A stretch of 63,853 nt of DNA, counting the filler, from Octopus bimaculoides (lineage: Eukaryota): NCBI RefSeq assembly GCF_001194135.2. It is 8 parts of 6 records of this genome, joined end to end, with 100 filler letters (N's around TTAATTAATTAA, not from the genome) between each part and the next. Parts side by side here need not be neighbours in the genome. Positions count along the whole stretch, not along the records: positions 16,422 to 26,858 come from NC_068990.1; 7 more parts are not named here. One strand, 5' to 3'. Position 1 is the first letter of the stretch. Every line of letters begins with the position of its first letter. This document shows positions 16,822 to 26,958 of the stretch, piece after piece. A program made the position numbers and the translations under genes. The notes beneath the pieces are model-generated. The model saw only the letters and a program-made list of their open reading frames with translations. It searched no databases and was not told the DNA's origin.

Positions 16822-18423
16822 TCATTTTCTTGCTTTCTTTGGTTGGGAAAGTTCTGCGATTGCATTCGTAGTCTCTGTCGTAGCAAACTGCAGGACTGGA
16901 GAGCTTAGGGGCATTGGAAGGGTTATTATTTGTTGGGTTCCATTGTTTTGATCCGTAGATTGGAGGGCAGCTGATTGCTGAAAGTTTAGAAGAGAACCGT
17001 CTGGCAGTGTAGGAGCGGCATACACGACTCCTTGAGGGGTCTGATACATCACAAATCCAGGGGTCATAGTTGTGGCCGATGTCGTACCATGCTGACCCGT
17101 GGCAGGGACAGACATAAGGTTTACAGTCTGGTTTTGGGTGTTATTTGTACTTGTCGAAACCGACGTCGCTGATGTCGTGGATGCTGAAGCTGTTAGTTGC
17201 AAGGCTTCTCCACTTACTGAAGTCACCGTCGTTGGGCTACTCATGTTTGTATTATTATTGGTGTTGCCAGATATATTGGCTATGGACACTACTTGTGTAT
17301 TAGGTAGTCGGTACACAGGTGCGGCTGCCGCCTGGGCGATTTGTTGGGTCCCCTGTTGAAAGGGGATTGTAAATTGCGTCCCTGGCTGCAAAATAGCCGT
17401 CAGACTAGGCGATACCTGCATGGAGATATTAGTGTTCGTGTTGCCATTGCTGGTGGTAGAATGGGTTGAGGCGGTGGTAGCATGAGCAGCAGTAACAGAA
17501 ACCGGCTTTGTCGTGGTTGCAGAGCTAGATGGTATCGTTGATAGAGTGGAAGGCACCAGCGCGGCCATGGGTAACTGATTCTGACCGACACCAGTTGAAG
17601 TAACGTACAGTGACGTTGATTGCGGTGGCGGAGGCGACGACGTCATGGCGTTACCTATAAGTTGAGATCTGTTTAGCACCTGGTCCCCTGGCATCTGGGC
17701 CAAAAGGGGTTTCAAATCCGCTTTATTTTCATCCTCCACTGAATACGTTAGTTCAGTTTCTTCGAATCCGGTAGGGTTCATACGTTGTTGATGGGAAGGA
17801 CCATCGGCAGAAGTGTCCGGGGAATTTAAACAGGTTTGGATAAGGGCTTTTCCGCTGTCACTCGTTATCATGGGTTGAAGCTTGCGAGTGGCGAATGTAT
17901 ATACATGTCCCGTTTCACTCGCTACAAGCAGCATTACCTGAGTACCAGTTAATGTAGATAATTCATAAGCTTTTTTCATGATCCCAGTTTTTCTTTTACT
18001 GAACGTTGTATACCTGCGGAGTTTATTTTGAATAAATTCCATTTTGATTTTGACACGACCTTTTGTCTTTTTGCCAGGTTTTAGTCCATCGGGCGGTCGT
18101 CTAACCTGATGTTGGCCTTGGTTTTGTTGATGTGACTGTGATTGTAAATGTAAATCGTTTCCAATACAATCACTTTCTGAATCTGAATCCGAATTATCGT
18201 CACCAAGTTCGTTATTGGAATGTGTTGAAGCCATGGTTGTCTGCATCCTGCTGCCTGGAGCCAAACTCAAGTGTTTCGAGTCAGCCCCACTCGGAGCGGT
18301 CGATGCAATTCCCGAAGTTTTGAATACGCTTTGATCCACTAGTAGTCTACTACCATTTGTTATGTTATCTGAATGGACGTACTGCGATACTGTTAACGTT
18401 TCACAGTGATTAGAATTCTGCAT
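16822..18423 (-). CDS. SRF: Serum response factor (SRF-type MADS-box transcription factor), single-exon ORF, 533 aa from the first ATG
   Basis: KPGKKTKGRVKIKMEFIQNKLRRYTTFSKRKTGIMKKAYELSTLTGTQVMLLVASETGHVYTFATRKLQPMITSDSGKALIQTCLNSPD (about 18081-17815) is nearly identical to the animal SRF MADS+SAM core; downstream QRMNPTGFEETELTYSV and GFVMYQTPQGVVYAAPTLPDGSLLNF match SRF motifs; uninterrupted frame to TGA. The track's start at 18429 is a TTG; the ATG is at 18423. Confidence 0.97.
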   Translation of the reverse strand: MQNSNHCETLTVSQYVHSDNITNGSRLLVDQSVFKTSGIASTAPSGADSKHLSLAPGSRMQTTMASTHSNNELGDDNSDSDSESDCIGNDLHLQSQSHQQNQGQHQVRRPPDGLKPGKKTKGRVKIKMEFIQNKLRRYTTFSKRKTGIMKKAYELSTLTGTQVMLLVASETGHVYTFATRKLQPMITSDSGKALIQTCLNSPDTSADGPSHQQRMNPTGFEETELTYSVEDENKADLKPLLAQMPGDQVLNRSQLIGNAMTSSPPPPQSTSLYVTSTGVGQNQLPMAALVPSTLSTIPSSSATTTKPVSVTAAHATTASTHSTTSNGNTNTNISMQVSPSLTAILQPGTQFTIPFQQGTQQIAQAAAAPVYRLPNTQVVSIANISGNTNNNTNMSSPTTVTSVSGEALQLTASASTTSATSVSTSTNNTQNQTVNLMSVPATGQHGTTSATTMTPGFVMYQTPQGVVYAAPTLPDGSLLNFQQSAALQSTDQNNGTQQIITLPMPLSSPVLQFATTETTNAIAELSQPKKARK

Positions 18424-18539
18424 TGTCAACGAGAAAGGAATAATTTACCAAATTAAACGAACTGCCGTCAATAGGAAAGCCATAACGGGAAAGTGAGGAA
18501 CAAATTACAGCCAAGCATTCAATAACTACACAAATATAT

Positions 18540-18574
18540 ACTTCCGCCAAAAAAGTCCATTACGATTCGCCATT
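18540..18574 (-). promoter_or_regulatory. ETS-type (CGGAAGT) and YY1-type (AATGGCG) motifs in the probable SRF 5' leader/proximal promoter
   Basis: acttccg 18540-18546 and cgccatt 18568-18574 on the plus strand. Confidence 0.35.
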
Positions 18575-18778
18575 GTCAAATATAAAGAAAACTAATAAAT
18601 AACTACGACACAAGCACTAATGATTGTTTAAGGGAAACTACTATATTGTCAGGCATTCGCAATATAACTGTCTGCAAAATAACTGTGTATTTGCGTGTAT
18701 GCAATGAAACTAGCGCGGAAGAATATGTGAGGTTGGCCGTGTTGTGTTACCCGTATCAAGTTTGGAAGTACGGGGTTC

Positions 18779-18840
18779 CCATATATGGATGGCACGGCCA
18801 AATATGGCGCACGTGGAATGTGTGTGTGATTGACCCGCCC
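18779..18840 (-). promoter_or_regulatory. SRF promoter: tandem CArG boxes, E-box, GC box
   Basis: CCATATATGG 18779-18788, CCAAATATGG 18798-18807, CACGTG 18810-18815, CCCGCCC 18834-18840, in a CpG-retaining island upstream of the ATG. Confidence 0.85.
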
Positions 18841-20139
18841 CTCGCTTCACTCATTCTCTCTCTCTTCGTTTAATATTCTTCTTATCACTAACTCTTTCCC
18901 CTCCTTCTCTCCACTCGTCTATCTTTTATTCTTTCTCTAAAAAAAAAAAAAAAACCTTTCTCCTTTTACCCTCTCTTATTCTCTATGCAACAGTAACATA
19001 CCGCTCCCACTTCGACTATTTGGTGGTTCTGACGATAAGCTTTCAATAAACTATGGTAGCCACTAAATGTCACTTTTCTTAATTAAAGTTTGTCCATTCA
19101 TAATTTTTCTTAATATTAAAATAATTCATGAAAATAGAGATAAGAGTATGTTAACAAAAAATATCTTCGAACCATACGTTTAATTTTTTGATTAAAAAAA
19201 AAATACCTGTTATACGCAGAACTACCCAACTTTACCCAATTTTTTGTTCACTATCAAAATAATTCATTGTGCGTCTAATTATAATTTTTCTTTCATCAAA
19301 GTAAGTTTCAAATTAAAGAATAGTAATTGTAGATTACTCCTTATAAAAAACACAAGAGATAAATCTCTAATTATTAAATATTCATTTTATTTTAAACTTA
19401 TCAACATAAAAGCAGAATCGAAATTCTGTTGCAGGCGAGTAAGTGCTTCTGTAATAAAGAAAGGGCAACTGTCGCATGTGGCGTGCTTTTTTTACTACTA
19501 ACTTTCACAAAAGCGTGTTTGTTCGTGTGAGAGGCTCTGACAACTCGAGGTTTTATTTAGAACGTCTTCTCTCTCTCACTGCATCTCTCTATCTTTCTCT
19601 TTATATCCTCTCTCTCTTTCTACCTTATATTCTCTTACTGTTTTCTCTCACTTTTTAACACTCATTTTTCTCTGTCTATCTATTTATCTGTCTGTCCATC
19701 TTTCTGTCAGTCAGTCTGTCTGTCTATGCCTTTCTCTATCTTTTCTGCCTTTCTCTCTCTCTCTCTAAATTAATTTTTCTTTCCTCATCTAATCTTCTAT
19801 CTTTTCTTCTCTTTTCTTCCATTATGCTTCACTTTTTCTCGTTCTCTTTATAACTTTTAATCTCTCATATTTTCATTTATGTCGTTATTTCTCATATTCT
19901 TTTAATCTCTTCTTATACTTTCCTTCTATTTTACTCATTTCTCTCCCTCTACATACCTCCTCCTCCGTGTTTCTTGTATCCACCCACTCTTCTCTGTTTT
20001 CCCTCTTCTTTTTCTCACATTCCTATTTTCGTTTTCATTTCTGTTTCTCTTGATCTTTCTGTCTCGCCTTTTTCTTTTCTCCATTATATCTCCTTACTCC
20101 ACTTTCTCCATCTTTCACCCCCTCCCCCTCCTCCTCTTC

Positions 20140-20236
20140 TTCTTCTTCTTCTTCTTCTTCTTCTTCTTCTTCTTCTTCTTCTTCTTCTTCTTCTTCTTCT
20201 TCTTCTTCTTCTTCTTCTTCTTCTTCTTCTTCTTCT
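20140..20236. repeat. (TTC)n microsatellite
   Basis: Directly visible. Confidence 0.95.
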
Positions 20237-20271
20237 TTATTCACTCATATTCTTACCATTATCTTTTTTTC

Positions 20272-20460
20272 TGCGTTTCAGTCATTAGACTGCGGCCATA
20301 CTGGGGCACTGCCTTGAAGAGTTTTAGTCGAAGGAATTGAGGCCAGTACTTAGTTATTCTTAAAATCTGGTACTGTTGGTCTTTTATGTCGAACAGGTAA
20401 ATTACAAGGATGTTAACAAACCAACTCTGGTTGTCAAACGGTGATGGGTGACAAACACAC
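20272..20460 (-). mobile_element. SINE family A 3' half
   Basis: tttcagtcattagactgcggccatactggggcac...ggttgtcaaacggtg. Confidence 0.8.
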
Positions 20461-20527
20461 GCACATACATATATATACATACACTCATACATACATACAT
20501 ACATACATACATACATACATACATACA

Positions 20528-21145
20528 TGGACCAACAACCAGATTACTACCTCCCACTTTGAAGGGTATGTATTTGCAATCCAGGAACAGGAAATATCAA
20601 CCAAATACCCAATGCACAAAAGGGACAGAGATGCAGAAAAAGCAGTAAAATGTGACAACCGATGCAGACTTTGTGGAGTTTACACTGAAGATATCACCCA
20701 CATCAGAAGCAGTTGTCCGAAAATGTCATCACGGTATTATCTGCAGTTACTCTATCCAGATTACAAGTTCAGGCTTATACCTGTAATTATTGGGACCCTG
20801 GGATATGTAACACACTGCTTAAATGCCAATCTTCAGAAATTAGGCTTCCGCAAAGCCAGAAAGGAGAAAGCTAATTCAAAGACTACAGATTCAATCCATC
20901 GCTAGAATTGTAAAAATCGGTAAAACTTTCCAGAAGTTTGTCATTTAAGTATATATGAGCATGTCTAGATCTGCAAGCATATGCATGAGAATACATACAT
21001 AAAACAAACATACAAATCAGTAAATATATATACATACATACATGCATGCATGCATACCTTGTTGTTGCTGTTGAAATTCCAATGAAAGACCGTTGGAGCT
21101 AGGTTAGAAACTGGTTCTTTCTCAAGTGGCAAGAAATCTTGAAAT
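20528..21145 (+). mobile_element. 5'-truncated, internally deleted R4-clade (RLE-type) non-LTR element: CCHC knuckle, nuclease tail, 3' UTR
   Basis: EGYVFAIQEQEISTKY...CRLCGVYTEDITHIRSSCPKMSSRYY...IPVIIGTLGYV; flanked by (CATA)n on both sides. Confidence 0.8.
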
Positions 21146-21649
21146 AAAACTGAATAATGATATGTATGTACATACAGACAAACATGCATACATGTATACA
21201 TCCATACATATATGCATGCATGCATGCATCCATCCATACATACATACAATATTAAGCTTAGAAGCTATGCACATTAACAGAATTTCCGACGAAAGTAGAA
21301 TAAAACAAACCGCACATATATACATATACATAAAAACATGAACAGAAATCTTCGAGCGAAGAATTTTGAACGAATCTGAATAAATCACAAGTTTGCTTCT
21401 AACCCACAGACATTATATAAAGAGACGAGGAAGGAAAAAATTACTGTTAAGAGATCCCCCCCCCCCCAGAAAATCTTGTATTATTCTGGCTGAAAATCTG
21501 GAACGAAAAGAGAAATCTCAAGCTCAGTGCATCGTGACTAAATGCAGTAAAGAGAGAGAGAGTAGTGTACTAGCATAAGACAGCAAAACATATGCAGTTG
21601 ACTCGGAAGCTTTCACCATAGCTGTAGGCAAACTGTATAATGGAAGGCA

Positions 21650-22340
21650 TCGGGAAGGGCCCTAATAGTTGGATATTGGTATAACAAGCTGACATTTTAC
21701 AGGAAACCACTAATAAGTTTATTCAAAAGTACTATGGAAGGTCAGATTGACATACGAAATTGATTTGCTATAGCACGGACGAATCTCGTGGCCAAGAACG
21801 AAACCACTGAGTTGCCTGAAAAGTATAGGCTCGTTGCTTGCCTAAACATTATGTACAATCTATCTCAACCAATTCCTCCAGGATCATTGCGAGTCCAGCA
21901 ACATAGCGACTGATGAGCAGGTTTGAAGTTGGAAAAAAAAACAAAAAAAAAAAACATCGTCGGAGCCTTACAACAGTATGGGCTTGATTGGAGGAAAGCA
22001 TTTGGCTCTTTCCCCCACTCATGGCTACTGAAGTGTCTCCATTTGGTAAAAGAATCTGCTATCTTAATTACTGCCATTGAGAGGCTAACAAAGACCTGGA
22101 AAACAATTCTCGCTCTCAGAACGGAGAATGGAACGGTCATCTCAAATGCCATAAACACTTCAAAGGGCATATTTCAAAGAGAGAGTCTCTGTAAGTTTGT
22201 CCATGTTGGCGTTAGATTCATTGTCATTCCTGCTACAAAAATCAAATGGCTACATCCTAGGGTCTGCAACTGTTAGAAATATTAATGTAACCCATAATTT
22301 TGTGGATGACCTCAAGATTTGTGTTTAAAATGTTAACAAT

Positions 22341-22374
<34 letters not shown>

Positions 22375-23220
22375 AAAAGAAAAAACCCAGCTGGAATTAA
22401 TAATATTTTCAGCCAACATAGGAATGGAATTTGGCCAAAAGAAATGTTTATATTTGATTGTTGAACGGGGAAAATCTATTCCCCGGACCCCAAACTTGTG
22501 CAGCAATGCTCTCACTATCTCTCCTGTCCCACACAAAGAATGCTACGAGTACCTAGGCATTGATGAAAATATATTATACGAAGGTACTTTGAATAAAGAT
22601 AGAGTGACCCAAGAATATTATAGCAGACTTAGAAAAATAAGGCAGCCGGAACTCTTCTCTTGCGGTACTCCCACAATGCATTCGCAGTACCAGTGCTGAT
22701 TCCAACATTTGAGACATTTTTGTGGTCTATAGAAGAAATCCACTCCATAGACATTAAAACCCGCAAGATTCTGACTTCAACTGAAATCTCCACAGAAAAA
22801 GTGATATCGACAGGCTCTACCTTCGAAGAGATAGAGGAGGTAGAGGCTTGAAATTAGTAGGCAGCCTCAGATAGCACTTGCTAATCAACAACAGCAAAAA
22901 TAATTTCATTAACTTAGTGCTGAAAAGTGAAGGAAACAATATTCTAAGTGTCGGAAGCGAACTCTTCAAGAAGCATTCTCTTCCTGATGACCTCCCATAC
23001 AATCCCAAAACAGTTGCATTAACATACTTCAAAAAAGACCTGGAAGTGAAACGCTCAGTATACCAAAACGAAAAAAAAAAAAAAAAGACCATGTAGGGGT
23101 ATGTTTCCTGAAGGCTTGAAGAAGACAATAACATTGAGATGAAGTGAAGTCTCTCTTGGACTCGTGACTAATCCAAAACAATCTAAAAACAGGAGATTGC
23201 TACTAAATACCTAATAAACA
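21650..23220 (+). mobile_element. Degenerate R4-clade reverse transcriptase region
   Basis: KYRLVACLNIMY, LDWRKAFGSFPHSWL, KGIFQRESL, HNFVDDLKI, GMEFGQKKC, YEYLGI, FHRKSDIDRLYLRRDRGGRGL across frameshifts. Confidence 0.85.
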
Positions 23221-23222
23221 AA

Positions 23223-23328
23223 GCTATAGTAGAAGACACTTGCCCAAGGTACCACGCAGTGGGATTGAACCCGGAACCATGTGATTGGTAAGCAAGCTAC
23301 TTACCACACAGCCACAACTGCACCTACA
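23223..23328 (-). mobile_element. SINE family A head
   Basis: agtagaagacacttgcccaaggtaccacgcagtgggattgaacccggaacc...taccacacagcc. Confidence 0.85.
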
Positions 23329-24084
23329 ATTACATATATGTTTANNNNNNNNNNNNNNNNNNNNNNNNNNNNNNNNNNNNNNNNNNNNNNNNNNNNNNNN
23401 NNNNNNNNNNNNNNNNNNNNNNNNNNNNNNNNNNNNNNNNNNNNNNNNNNNNNNNNNNNNNNNNNNNNNNNNNNNNNNNNNNNNNNNNNNNNNNNNNNNN
23501 NNNNNNNNNNNNNNNNNNNNNNNNNNNNNNNNNNNNNNNNNNNNNNNNNNNNNNNNNNNNNNNNNNNNNNNNNNNNNNNNNNNNNNNNNNNNNNNNNNNN
23601 NNNNNNNNNNNNNNNNNNNNNNNNNNNNNNNNNNNNNNNNNNNNNNNNNNNNNNNNNNNNNNNNNNNNNNNNNNNNNNNNNNNNNNNNNNNNNNNNNNNN
23701 NNNNNNNNNNNNNNNNNNNNNNNNNNNNNNNNNNNNNNNNNNNNNNNNNNNNNNNNNNNNNNNNNNNNNNNNNNNNNNNNNNNNNNNNNNNNNNNNNNNN
23801 NNNNNNNNNNNNNNNNNNNNNNNNNNNNNTATATATATATATATATATATGATATGTGTGTGCGTGTGTGTTAACTCTGATGTTTACCTTAATAAGTTCA
23901 TCTACGGGTGCAGGCTATGAACCAAAATAAAATGCCAAGTAGTGTTTGTTTATTGCATCAAGCACATGTCCTAAAATCAATAAATATCCGTTGAGTTTTA
24001 CGATTAGAAACGACAAGAATAGAGTGAGCGAGTGATTTCATTACATCAATTTCCAATTATTTCGTTTGAATTCAAAATGGTGAA

Positions 24085-24960
24085 TTTGTATGGGCAAGGA
24101 GCTCATTTTGCAATCACGTGGTTTCGGCTTCATATTGTAAAAATTTATATATTTATTAGGTGTAGGCACAGTTGTATTGTTAGGGAGCTTGATTTGCAAT
24201 GACGTAGTTTCGAGTTCACGTCGTTTCGGGTTCATGCCGTTTCCAGTTCACGTGGTTCATAATTTAAAACTTTATATATTTATTAGGCGTAGGCAAAACT
24301 GTACGGCTAAGGGGTTCGTTTTGCAATCACGTGGTTTCGGGTACAAATTTTAAAACTCTGTATAGTTATTAAGCGTAGGTACAGCTGTATGGTTAAGGTG
24401 TTCCTTTTGCAATGACGTGGTTTCGGGTTCACGTGGCTTCTGGTTCACGCGGTTTCGGGGTCACGTGGTTTCGGGGTCACGTGGTTTCGGGTTCATATTG
24501 TAAAATTTTATATTTCTTAGGTGTAGGCACTACTGTATGGTTAAGGAGTTCGTTTTGCAATCACATGGTTTGGGGTTTCAGGTTCATCTTTCAAAATTTT
24601 ATACATTTATTAGTTGTACGGTTAAGGAGCTCATTTTGCAATCAATCATATGGTTTCAGGTCCATATGTAAAAACTTGATGTATTTATTAGGAGTGGTTA
24701 TAACTGCATGGTCAAGGCACTACTGTATGGTTAAGGGGTTCGTTTTACAATCACGTGGTTTTGGGTTCAGGTGGTTTCGGGTTCATATTTTAAAACTTTA
24801 TATATTTATTAGACGTGGGCACAGCTGTATGGATAAAGAGCTCATTTTGCAATCACGTGGTTTCGAATTCAGTGAAACTGCGCTGCAATTTGGGTGAGTA
24901 TCTTTTACTATAACCAATGCCTTGGGAAGGAATTTGGTTGACGAAAACCGTGTGGAAGAC
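24085..24960 (+). repeat. Tandem array of ~8 SINE-head units (75-150 bp) ending in a SINE body
   Basis: Unit ggtgtaggcacagctgtatggttaaggagctcattttgcaatcacgtggtttcgggttca + AT-rich spacer, with a nested ~15-16 bp cacgtggtttcggg(g/t)t repeat; the last unit continues into family A body sequence. Confidence 0.9.
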
Positions 24961-25539
24961 TGTCTATGCGAGTTTGTGTCTGCATTGACAACAGAGTTTC
25001 AGTTCGTTTACACATGCGTAACTTAGCGGTTAATAAGGAACTTAGCATGAGAAGACTGAGTGTCAGTATGTTTTATCTATGACCATAAGTCCGACAAAAT
25101 ATATTTTATTCTGCCTGAAGGCTTGTGAAGAGCAATCTTCAGGCGAAACAAGATACAGTATGTAAGACTCATGATTATGGATTAAATGTGTGTGTGTGTA
25201 TATATACATACATACATGCATAGATACATAAGAACATACACACCATCTTCGAACATCTTTCCTTTAACATCTTAAATGTAGGATTTCTTCCTTGAAGACG
25301 GAGGCTCGACTCATCCTATGATGGAATCAATCTACAAACACTATTATGGACCATCGAGTCCCCAGAAACAGCTGTTGGATTTGCAATACTGTTCTTCAAC
25401 CCCTTTAATTCTGTATATCATTTCTAATCTAATCTGTGTAAGGTGGATCTTTTTATATGTAAACATATAAACATACATACATATGTAGTGAAACTAACAC
25501 TTCTATCGCCATTATATACAAACAAACCATCTTCCCCAC

Positions 25540-26566
25540 TGTTATAAATATATTCAAGTTCGGGCGTAGTAGAGAGCAGCCTGCTGTATCCATCACATGA
25601 CTGACTATTCTTTGCGCGGGTAAATTATCTCGTACCGTTCCTGCCAGAACGCAAACTGACCAATCACAGCCCCTAATAAGGTCACGTGATAGTGTTTTTC
25701 TAATGCTTCTCTGTAGCCTACCTTCAGCTATAAATAGACTAAATTATACCCGGCAAATTGGTCGCGCCTCAAATCTCCTTTGAGATCTGGTGTTGACCAC
25801 ACACGCGTAACACAGCAGCAACCAGTTTCCAGCGACGACATCAACACCATCGTACAACTACGAACTACAAGCATCGCCACCGATGTCGCCAGCAGCAACA
25901 CGACTCTGCGTACTACCAGCATCGCCGCCAGCGTCAACATGACTCTACACGTACACTAGCTATCAACAGCTAACCAAACTACCGCAGAACTTCTGTCTTC
26001 GATCCTGTTTGTGTGATTCGCCTCACCACGAAATAACAGCCAAGAACCCAGCCTGCGAAGAACATCTGTATTCAAGAACCCGGCTTGGCATAGTAGCCCT
26101 AACATCACAACTAATGATCGCTCTGCCCCACACGCCTTAACTTCTTATATACAGACACTTACCACTGTGTACTCTAAGAACTGGTATCTTAAATTCTTAT
26201 ACGCGTTACTGACTCTTTTCTATACTATGTATCTCTTGCATACNNNNNNNNNNNNNNNNNNNNNNNNNNNNNNNNNNNNNNNNNNNNNNNNNNNNNNNNN
26301 NNNNNNNNNNNNNNNNNNNNNNNNNNNNNNNNNNNNNNNNNNNNNNNNNNCCAGTCTTATATTGTGTTTTATTATGTCGCATTCACACTCACACACAGAC
26401 ATACATTTTAATACTACAATAAATCTTACTGTTATTCATCTCATACGGTTGTGTTCCTATCGTCTTCCTTACTGGCATTTACGAATTGTCTATGTTATCG
26501 AAGTATAACATATAACTATATCATTTGATATATTTTTGTGTTCGACCGTGTGACGCGTTTAATAAA
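25540..26566 (+). mobile_element. Probable solo LTR (or orphan Pol II transcription unit); right end lost in gaps
   Basis: Begins TGTT, CpG-rich, promoter boxes at 25660-25736, short internal repeats, no long ATG ORF, AATAAA at 26561-26566. No TSD confirmed. Confidence 0.55.
25660..25736 (+). promoter_or_regulatory. CCAAT box, CArG box, E-box, TATA box
   Basis: gaCCAATca 25660-25664, CCTAATAAGG 25672-25681, gtCACGTGa 25683-25688, TATAAATA 25729-25736. Confidence 0.7.
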
Positions 26567-26958
26567 NNNNNNNNNNGACACTTACCACTGTGTACTCTAA
26601 GAACTGGTATCTTAAATTCTTATACGCGTTACTGACTCTTTTCTATACTATGTATCTCTTGCATACACATACATGTATTACTCACACACACACTTTTGTT
26701 TACATGACGACCAGTCTTATATTGTGTTTTATTATGTCGCATTCACACTCACACACAGACATACATTTTAATACTACAATAAATCTTACTGTTATTCATC
26801 TCATACGGTTGTGTTCCTATCGTCTTCCTTACTGGCATTTACGAATTGTCTATGTTATNNNNNNNNNNNNNNNNNNNNNNNNNNNNNNNNNNNNNNNNNN
26901 NNTTAATTAATTAANNNNNNNNNNNNNNNNNNNNNNNNNNNNNNNNNNNNNNNNNNNN

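What the first reader, a model, noticed from the sequence alone, without database searches (positions are those of the whole stretch)
25540..26566. LTR-like unit with a complete SRF-responsive promoter, divergent from SRF itself
Within 77 bp there is an NF-Y-consensus CCAAT, a perfect CArG (CCTAATAAGG), a CACGTG 1 bp later and a TATA box. The CArG-then-E-box juxtaposition mirrors the SRF promoter (18798-18815). Downstream are about 800 nt without a long ATG ORF, ending at AATAAA. Either an LTR family wired to the SRF pathway has landed 7 kb from the SRF gene, where it could act as an extra autoregulatory enhancer, or this is an SRF-inducible lncRNA gene. With the tandem CArGs and the E-box array, this is the best candidate for an undescribed system in the window: a TE-assisted SRF feedback module.
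Basis: partly seen in the sequence, partly recalled or inferred. Interest (0 to 1): 0.75.

Follow-up and report, generated by a model that had tools for sequence, protein, structure and literature searches.

The report
Promoter-like motif cluster, not an LTR
About 7 kb from the octopus SRF gene lies a real, statistically unusual cluster of promoter motifs ahead of roughly 0.6 kb of non-coding DNA, but nothing tested marks it as a retrotransposon LTR or ties it to SRF, so it is at most an ordinary candidate promoter.

Summary
The piece is Octopus bimaculoides chromosome CM046610.1. Only 1 of 3000 dinucleotide shuffles gave such a cluster.

The gap at 26244-26350 is bridged. Both flanks recur at 100% identity at 26577-26858 with 44 nt between them, most likely an unmerged contig. 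The "terminal AATAAA" (26561-26566) is simply the last six bases before the next run of N.

The LTR reading failed every hallmark I could test:
- no second copy
- no TG..CA pair with both a terminal inverted repeat and a target-site duplication
- no primer-binding site or polypurine tract
- no gag/pol, no Pfam domain, no protein relative

The unit is missing from the 10 kb upstream of SRF in O. sinensis, O. vulgaris and Argonauta hians. SRF's own two CArG boxes are invariant in all of them and in cuttlefish. Adjacency to SRF rests on a scaffold join across 484 N.

Copy number in the octopus genome could not be measured here.

Best reading, at modest confidence: a lineage-specific TATA-type Pol II promoter with a short non-coding transcription unit. 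TE origin is possible but unshown, and an SRF feedback role is unsupported. Interest is low.

The parts
25660..25664 (+). CCAAT box, in the context ctgaCCAATcacag, about 95 nt upstream of the predicted start site
   Evidence: Read directly; one of the four motifs in the shuffle test
25672..25681 (.). CArG-consensus decamer CCTAATAAGG, fitting CC(A/T)6GG
   Evidence: Pattern search. It is one of three in the piece; the other two lie in the conserved element upstream of SRF
25682..25689 (.). Palindromic E-box TCACGTGA (core CACGTG at 25683-25688), one base after the CArG
   Evidence: CArG and E-box adjacency occurred in 3 of 3000 shuffles
25729..25736 (+). TATA box TATAAATA
   Evidence: Read directly
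25754..25760 (+). Inr-like CAAATTG. This is the predicted transcription start, 26-31 nt after the first T of the TATA box
   Evidence: Inferred from spacing only; no transcript data were available
25756..26243 (+). First part of the non-coding body: C/A-rich, not CpG-depleted, with an imperfect ~45-nt internal duplication at about 25870-25959
   Evidence: GC 0.48-0.50 and CpG o/e 1.15-1.18. GC skew runs from -0.24 to -0.36. No ORF or Pfam domain, no Rfam family, and fold z-scores are not significant
26244..26350 (.). Assembly gap of 107 N. It is bridged by 44 nt at 26667-26710 in the redundant copy
   Evidence: D11, D13
26351..26566 (+). Second part of the non-coding body, ending at a contig end. 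The AATAAA at 26561-26566 is the last six bases before N
26418..26423 (+). Internal AATAAA, followed by the G/T-rich stretch GGTTGTGTT at 26447-26455. This is a candidate polyadenylation signal, giving a predicted unspliced RNA of about 620 nt once the gap is corrected
   Evidence: Read directly. Inference only, since AATAAA is common in AT-rich DNA
26577..26858 (+). Redundant copy of 26154-26498, 100% identical over 90 + 148 nt. It is most likely an unmerged contig or haplotype overlap placed after a nominal 10-N gap
   Evidence: D11, D13. About 1388 N follow in the assembly

Best explanation
The stretch is a lineage-specific, non-coding, TATA-type RNA polymerase II promoter unit.

Anatomy (shown):
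- A CCAAT box, a CArG box, a palindromic E-box and a TATA box sit within 77 bp.
- They lie just upstream of an Inr-like CA.
- About 0.6 kb of C/A-rich, CpG-undepleted DNA follows, with no ORF.
- That DNA reaches an AATAAA followed by a G/T-rich element.

Mechanism (inferred): NF-Y-type, MADS (SRF-type) and bHLH-Zip factors would bind upstream of TBP and drive a short unspliced non-coding transcript on the + strand, pointing away from SRF.

It is not demonstrably an LTR. Its position near SRF is best read as coincidental: it lies in a TE-rich, gap-ridden stretch that is not shared with sister species. That the cluster exceeds chance and that the unit is non-coding and absent from orthologous loci are also shown. 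Transcription, factor binding and any SRF responsiveness are inferred and untested.
For: - Motifs are at the stated places.
- The four-motif cluster appeared in 1 of 3000 shuffles, and CArG/E-box adjacency in 3 of 3000.
- The TATA-to-CA spacing of 26 nt fits a core promoter.
- GC is 0.48-0.50 and CpG o/e 1.15-1.18 across 25622-26121, against 0.26-0.6 in the decayed retroelement remnants at 20422-23321.
- Strand asymmetry is marked, with GC skew down to -0.36.
- There is no coding signal: stop counts per frame are ordinary and Pfam gave nothing. The minus-frame search found no protein relative. The exhaustive search with the 73-aa plus-frame segment returned one hit (E = 4e-4), which I judge spurious because it is a repetitive, low-complexity protein.
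- AATAAA at 26418 is followed by a G/T-rich element 24-32 nt later.
Against: - There is no transcript, CAGE or binding evidence of any kind.
- The shuffle test is post hoc.
- The unit is not found within 10 kb upstream of SRF in O. sinensis, O. vulgaris or A. hians. So there is no sign of purifying selection, and a young insertion or plain neutral DNA fits equally well.
- No strong 5' splice site lies on the + strand, and no gene is called in the 21.6-kb locus other than SRF.
- Genome copy number is unknown, so TE origin is not excluded.
Confidence: 0.4

Rival explanations
1. It is the LTR, or another promoter-bearing part, of a mobile element. Either it is a solo LTR, or it is a 5' LTR whose interior lies in the unsequenced ~1.4 kb and beyond.
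For: - The layout resembles U3-R-U5: promoter motifs, then a transcribed stretch, then AATAAA.
- 25540 and 26510 give TGTTATA...TATAACA, a 7-nt terminal inverted repeat.
- The unit is absent at the orthologous position in sister species, as an insertion would be.
- CpG is not depleted, as in a young insertion.
- The sense strand is strongly skewed in composition.
- Retroviral LTRs with CCAAT/enhancer elements and CArG boxes are documented (PMC7601775).
Against: - There is no second copy in the 10.4-kb piece or the 21.6-kb locus, other than the 100%-identical assembly redundancy.
- No TG..CA pair has both a TIR of at least 5 and a TSD of at least 4. A 7-nt TIR is near chance in AT-rich DNA.
- No TGG-type primer-binding site follows 26510, and no purine tract precedes 25540.
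- There are no gag/pol or other Pfam domains.
- No copy turned up in about 115 kb of other octopod DNA.
- LTR retrotransposons make up less than 1% of the O. bimaculoides genome (PMC6238403).
Confidence: 0.25
2. It is a non-functional coincidence: neutral intergenic DNA, possibly a decayed fragment of something unrecognisable, that happens to carry four short motifs.
For: - Each motif is short, and a lone CArG is expected about 0.8 times per piece.
- Stray CArGs occur upstream of SRF in every other species' locus.
- There is no conservation, no called gene, and no RNA family or structure.
Against: - The order and spacing match a real core promoter, not merely co-occurrence.
- The cluster sits exactly at the edge of a GC- and CpG-rich block that stands out from its surroundings.
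Confidence: 0.22
3. It is the promoter and non-coding first exon of a protein-coding gene whose coding exons lie to the right, in the ~1.4-kb gap or beyond.
For: - The promoter-like architecture.
- The right side is unassembled.
Against: - There is no good GTRAGT splice donor on the + strand between 25756 and 26858.
- No protein-coding gene is called within 10 kb.
- Only about 27 kb of the chromosome record remains beyond the locus.
Confidence: 0.1
4. One reading: a TE-borne, SRF-responsive promoter or enhancer that landed next to SRF and forms an extra autoregulatory loop.
For: - A consensus CArG lies next to an E-box, as in the SRF upstream element.
- The unit is divergent from SRF, at a nominal 7.3 kb.
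Against: - TE status is unsupported.
- The unit is not at this position in three other octopods, whereas the SRF-proximal CArG pair is invariant from octopus to cuttlefish.
- Adjacency depends on a 484-N scaffold join.
- Apart from the motifs, the two CArG/E-box sites share no sequence.
- The E-box in the SRF element is itself not conserved in Argonauta, where it reads CACATG.
- The 'E-box array' is SINE-derived.
Confidence: 0.03

Closest known systems
TATA-type Pol II promoters that combine a CCAAT box and a CArG box upstream of TATA, as in cytoskeletal and muscle actin genes and in immediate-early genes (from my own knowledge of the literature; no comparator sequence was used)
   Same: It has the same motif set and order (CCAAT, CArG, TATA) within about 100 bp of the predicted start, plus an adjacent E-box.
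   Different: No coding gene follows. There is no evidence of transcription or SRF binding, no Ets/TCF site abutting the CArG, and no conservation in sister species.
The SRF gene's own upstream element in this same window (two CArG boxes at 18779 and 18798, an E-box at 18810, and a GC-rich box)
   Same: A CArG is followed within 1-2 nt by CACGTG when read on the + strand.
   Different: - The SRF element has two CArGs and no TATA.
- It is invariant across four octopods and about 90% identical to cuttlefish over 120 nt.
- The finding has one CArG, is not conserved, shares no flanking sequence, and sits in the mirrored order relative to its own predicted direction of transcription.
U3 regions of alpharetroviral LTRs, which carry CCAAT/enhancer elements, CArG boxes and Y boxes (PMC7601775)
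   Same: CCAAT and CArG elements lie upstream of a TATA box, with a polyadenylation signal downstream.
   Different: None of the structural hallmarks was found here: paired copies, TG..CA termini with a TSD, PBS, PPT, or adjacent gag/pol.
Gypsy-type LTR retrotransposons of molluscs. These were the only superfamily found intact in O. bimaculoides, with 275 copies, and LTR elements make up less than 1% of the genome (PMC6238403)
   Same: A length near 0.9 kb would be a plausible LTR size.
   Different: No internal region, no family members and no hallmarks were found. The prior for an LTR at a random site is low.

Membership tests
LTR of an LTR retrotransposon or endogenous retrovirus | Two direct copies flanking an internal region, or a solo copy flanked by a 4-6 bp target-site duplication | tested here: not met
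   The only repeat is the 100%-identical redundancy across a 10-N gap. No TG..CA pair combines a TIR of at least 5 with a TSD of at least 4. Gaps to the right limit the test.
LTR of an LTR retrotransposon or endogenous retrovirus | TG...CA termini with a short terminal inverted repeat | tested here: inconclusive
   25540/26510 give TGTTATA...TATAACA (7 nt) but have no TSD. That is near chance expectation in AT-rich DNA.
LTR of an LTR retrotransposon or endogenous retrovirus | A primer-binding site (TGG...) just after a 5' LTR, or a polypurine tract just before a 3' LTR | tested here: not met
   No TGG lies within the 50 nt after 26510. The sequence before 25540 is C/A-rich, not purine-rich. 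No tRNA set was available for a formal complementarity test.
LTR of an LTR retrotransposon or endogenous retrovirus | Adjacent gag/pol coding sequence | tested here: not met
   Open segments across 25252-26243 have no Pfam domain, and there are no protein relatives. The ~1.4 kb to the right is unsequenced.
LTR of an LTR retrotransposon or endogenous retrovirus | Membership of a dispersed multi-copy family in the genome | not testable with these tools
   No octopus genome can be searched at nucleotide level here. There were 0 copies in about 115 kb of octopod loci and 0 exact matches in the metagenome and viral collections.
SRF target element (serum response element / CArG promoter) | CC(A/T)6GG consensus | tested here: met
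   CCTAATAAGG at 25672-25681.
SRF target element (serum response element / CArG promoter) | Conservation of the CArG in orthologous loci | tested here: not met
   No orthologous sequence lies within 10 kb upstream of SRF in O. sinensis, O. vulgaris or A. hians. By contrast, the SRF-proximal CArGs are invariant.
SRF target element (serum response element / CArG promoter) | SRF occupancy and stimulus-dependent activity | not testable with these tools
   No binding or expression data were available.
TATA-type Pol II core promoter | A TATA box 25-31 nt upstream of an initiator-like start | tested here: met
   TATAAATA at 25729-25736 and CA at 25754-25755. This rests on sequence only.
TATA-type Pol II core promoter | Mapped transcript 5' ends | not testable with these tools
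   No transcript data. The ORFs of the region are not in the protein collection.
Known structured RNA or miRNA precursor | A match to an Rfam family, or a fold more stable than shuffles | tested here: not met
   No Rfam match inside 25500-26858. Fold z-scores ran from -1.25 to +0.69.

The most novel reading that the evidence does not exclude
An O. bimaculoides-specific promoter unit carrying CArG, E-box and TATA was brought next to the SRF gene by a mobile element. It is transcribed in response to SRF as a divergent non-coding RNA or enhancer, adding a species-specific loop to an otherwise deeply conserved autoregulatory gene.
Probability: 0.03. Interest if true: 0.55.

Novelty: new member of a known kind. 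Interest (0 to 1): 0.15.

Why it matters
If it were transcribed, this would be one more lineage-specific non-coding transcription unit in a cephalopod genome already known to be rich in TEs and lncRNAs. That would be useful for annotation but not surprising.

The more solid by-product concerns SRF itself. Its proximal CArG pair is conserved from octopus to cuttlefish, and that element, not this unit, is the place to look for SRF autoregulation in cephalopods.

The case is also a warning. Scaffold gaps, unmerged contigs and SINE-derived arrays in the 2015-era assembly can look like regulatory architecture.

Tried and rejected
1. Protein-level searches for relatives or copies.
- Ten exact ORFs of the region are not in the 15-billion-protein collection.
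- A 233-aa minus-frame translation, with X marking stops, found nothing at E <= 10.
- The 73-aa plus-frame open segment, run against 1.84 billion representatives, gave one borderline hit to a repetitive low-complexity protein, which I judged spurious.
- For eukaryotic assemblies these collections appear to hold only annotated proteins, so they cannot measure the copy number of non-coding DNA. For that reason I did not spend the third large protein search.

2. An exact 29-mer spanning CCAAT, CArG and the E-box gave 0 matches in the metagenome and viral contig collections.

3. miRNA or hairpin idea. Low folding energies on the minus strand at 25860-25955 come from composition, with a z-score of -0.25.

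4. PBS candidates at 25759 (TGGTCGCGCC...) and 26181 (TGGTATC...). I rejected both by position. The first lies only about 23 nt after the TATA box, and neither follows a plausible LTR end.

5. A 15-nt inverted match between 25361-25375 and the sequence beyond the big gap (E = 0.005) is too short to support terminal inverted repeats.

6. A perfect splice-donor-like GGTAAGT on the minus strand at 26157-26163 is a single 7-mer at chance level. Cuttlefish SRF contigs are collinear with the genome, so they give no support for distant upstream SRF exons.

7. A shared 10-mer, ACCAATCACA, between the SINE head and the CCAAT region is at chance level.

Full report
**Source and layout.** The 533-aa SRF ORF of the piece (16822-18423, minus strand) is encoded exactly once in the collection. 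It lies on Octopus bimaculoides GCA_001194135.2, chromosome record CM046610.1. The fetched locus L001 reproduces the window base for base, gaps included.

The piece consists of four contigs of 6923, 2414, 216 and 282 nt, separated by runs of N. The finding lies on the second, third and fourth contigs. It is separated from the SRF contig by 484 N at 23346-23829.

**The gap.** Both flanks of the gap at 26244-26350 recur after the 10-N run at 26567-26576. The stretch 26154-26243 equals 26577-26666, and 26351-26498 equals 26711-26858. Both matches are 100% identical, in the same order and orientation, and 44 nt of CA-rich sequence lies between them. The flanks are therefore continuous, and the gap is probably about 44 nt.

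The second copy is most simply an unmerged contig or haplotype overlap. A true tandem duplication cannot be excluded. About 1388 N follow 26858.

| Motif | Position |
|---|---|
| CCAAT | 25660-25664 |
| CArG CCTAATAAGG | 25672-25681 |
| CACGTG (within palindromic TCACGTGA) | 25683-25688 |
| TATAAATA | 25729-25736 |

An Inr-like CA follows at 25754-25755, 26 nt after the first T of the TATA box.

In 3000 dinucleotide-preserving shuffles of the contigs, all four motifs fell within 80 nt once. A CArG within 0-3 nt of CACGTG occurred in three shuffles, whereas the real sequence has two such pairs, at 18798 and 25672. The cluster therefore exceeds chance, with the caveat that the motif set was chosen after looking.

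A single CArG is unremarkable. About 0.8 are expected per piece, and stray ones occur upstream of SRF in the other species' loci.

**What follows the promoter-like cluster.**
- From 25622 to 26121, GC is 0.48-0.50 and CpG o/e is 1.15-1.18. The decayed retroelement remnants at 20422-23321 show CpG o/e of 0.26-0.6.
- The + strand is C- and A-rich, with GC skew down to -0.36.
- Stop-codon counts in the six frames are ordinary for this composition.
- No open segment hits Pfam.
- No Rfam family matches, and local folds are no more stable than shuffles.
- An internal AATAAA at 26418-26423 is followed 24-32 nt later by GGTTGTGTT.

Taken at face value, this predicts an unspliced non-coding RNA of about 620 nt. 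That is inference only.

**Test of the LTR reading.**
- The only long repeat is the assembly redundancy described above.
- I scanned every TG in 25252-25759 against every CA in 25800-26567. No pair had both a terminal inverted repeat of at least 5 nt and a target-site duplication of at least 4 nt.
- The best inverted repeat, TGTTATA...TATAACA at 25540/26510, has no duplication.
- Nothing resembling a TGG primer-binding site follows 26510, and no purine tract precedes 25540.
- There are no retroelement domains.
- Protein-level searches for relatives of either strand's longest open frames found nothing real.
- The core (25490-26243) has no match elsewhere in L001 or in about 93 kb from O. sinensis, O. 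vulgaris and A. hians.
- LTR retrotransposons make up less than 1% of the O. bimaculoides genome (PMC6238403).

The genome-wide copy number, which is the decisive figure, cannot be obtained with the collections available here.

**Test of the link to SRF.** I fetched the SRF loci of O. sinensis (L002), O. vulgaris (L003) and Argonauta hians (L004) with 10-kb flanks. The two Octopus species align to O. bimaculoides at 86-91% identity from downstream of SRF to window position 23222, except for 21333-22027. The alignment stops at a SINE fragment and the 484-N gap. The A. hians locus aligns only across the SRF gene and its proximal upstream region (16822-18853, 82%). Nothing from 23830-26858 is found in any of them.

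Upstream of the break, the O. sinensis locus carries different sequence, including retroelement-like ORFs. This is a region of TE turnover.

The SRF-proximal element behaves quite differently. It is essentially invariant in all four octopods, including both CArG boxes. Over 120 nt it is 90% identical to the cuttlefish Acanthosepion pharaonis. Its E-box reads CACATG in Argonauta, so even the CArG/E-box pairing that the finding is said to mirror is not a conserved feature.

Apart from the motifs, the two sites share no sequence.

The 'E-box array' at about 24030-24870 is a tandem array of tRNA-like SINE heads, each of which contains CACGTGG.

**Verdict.** The motif cluster is real and resembles a promoter. 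The LTR label and the SRF-feedback idea are not supported. I weigh the readings as follows:

| Reading | Confidence |
|---|---|
| Lineage-specific Pol II promoter unit producing a short non-coding RNA | 0.40 |
| TE or LTR-derived fragment | 0.25 |
| Non-functional coincidence | 0.22 |
| First exon of an unassembled gene | 0.10 |

CCAAT-CArG-TATA promoters are textbook (my own knowledge), and LTRs that carry CCAAT and CArG elements are documented (PMC7601775). Under any of these readings this is a member of a known kind, and interest is low.

Noticed in passing
window 18730-18848; L007 9587-9705: A 120-nt non-coding element about 350 nt upstream of the SRF start codon holds two CArG boxes and a GC-rich box. 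It is invariant in four octopods and 90% identical to cuttlefish. It is a strong candidate for a deeply conserved SRF autoregulatory element.
   Followed up: partly
window 16822-18423 (-); L002, L004, L007: The SRF coding sequence is one uninterrupted ORF in O. bimaculoides, O. sinensis, A. hians and A. pharaonis: 533-546 aa, with gene range equal to ORF length. The O. vulgaris model, by contrast, spans 29.7 kb and encodes 430 aa.
   Followed up: partly
L008-L013 versus L007 8182-14444: Six cuttlefish Logan contigs of about 6 kb carry SRF. All are collinear with the genome; the two that were aligned share one end, and all start 1.5-1.8 kb upstream of the ATG.
   Followed up: partly
window 24030-24870: The 'E-box array' is a tandem array (86-nt and 16-nt periods) of a tRNA-like SINE head related to the SINE fragment at 23223-23330. 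CACGTG is part of each unit.
   Followed up: yes
window 24870-25250: By eye, a SINE-body-like sequence ends in a mixed TG/TA/ACAT microsatellite tail. It has no match in the other loci.
   Followed up: no
window 25242-25250 and 25526-25534: A 9-nt direct repeat, ACCATCTTC, flanks a 275-nt block that ends in an A/C-rich tail. It may be a small retroposon with a target-site duplication, inserted just left of the promoter-like cluster. Taken alone it is near chance level.
   Followed up: no
window 20441-23222: Decayed, CpG-depleted retroelement remnants lie here, with a weak zf-RVT hit at E = 0.0034 and poly-A runs. The stretch 22028-23222 is shared with O. sinensis and O. vulgaris at 86-87% identity, so that part is old.
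   Followed up: partly
L002 3815-5010 (O. sinensis); matching region of L003: ORFs that look retroelement-like by eye sit upstream of SRF in O. sinensis and have no counterpart in O. bimaculoides. Pfam gave no significant family.
   Followed up: partly
window 20129-20240; L004 3078-3212: A long (CTT)n microsatellite lies upstream of SRF. A similar run is present upstream of SRF in A. hians.
   Followed up: no
L001, record coordinates 94549375-94570976 of 94598374: In this assembly the SRF locus lies only about 27 kb from the end of the chromosome record. In O. sinensis it is about 15 Mb from the end. The end of the O. bimaculoides record may be a scaffolding artefact.
   Followed up: no
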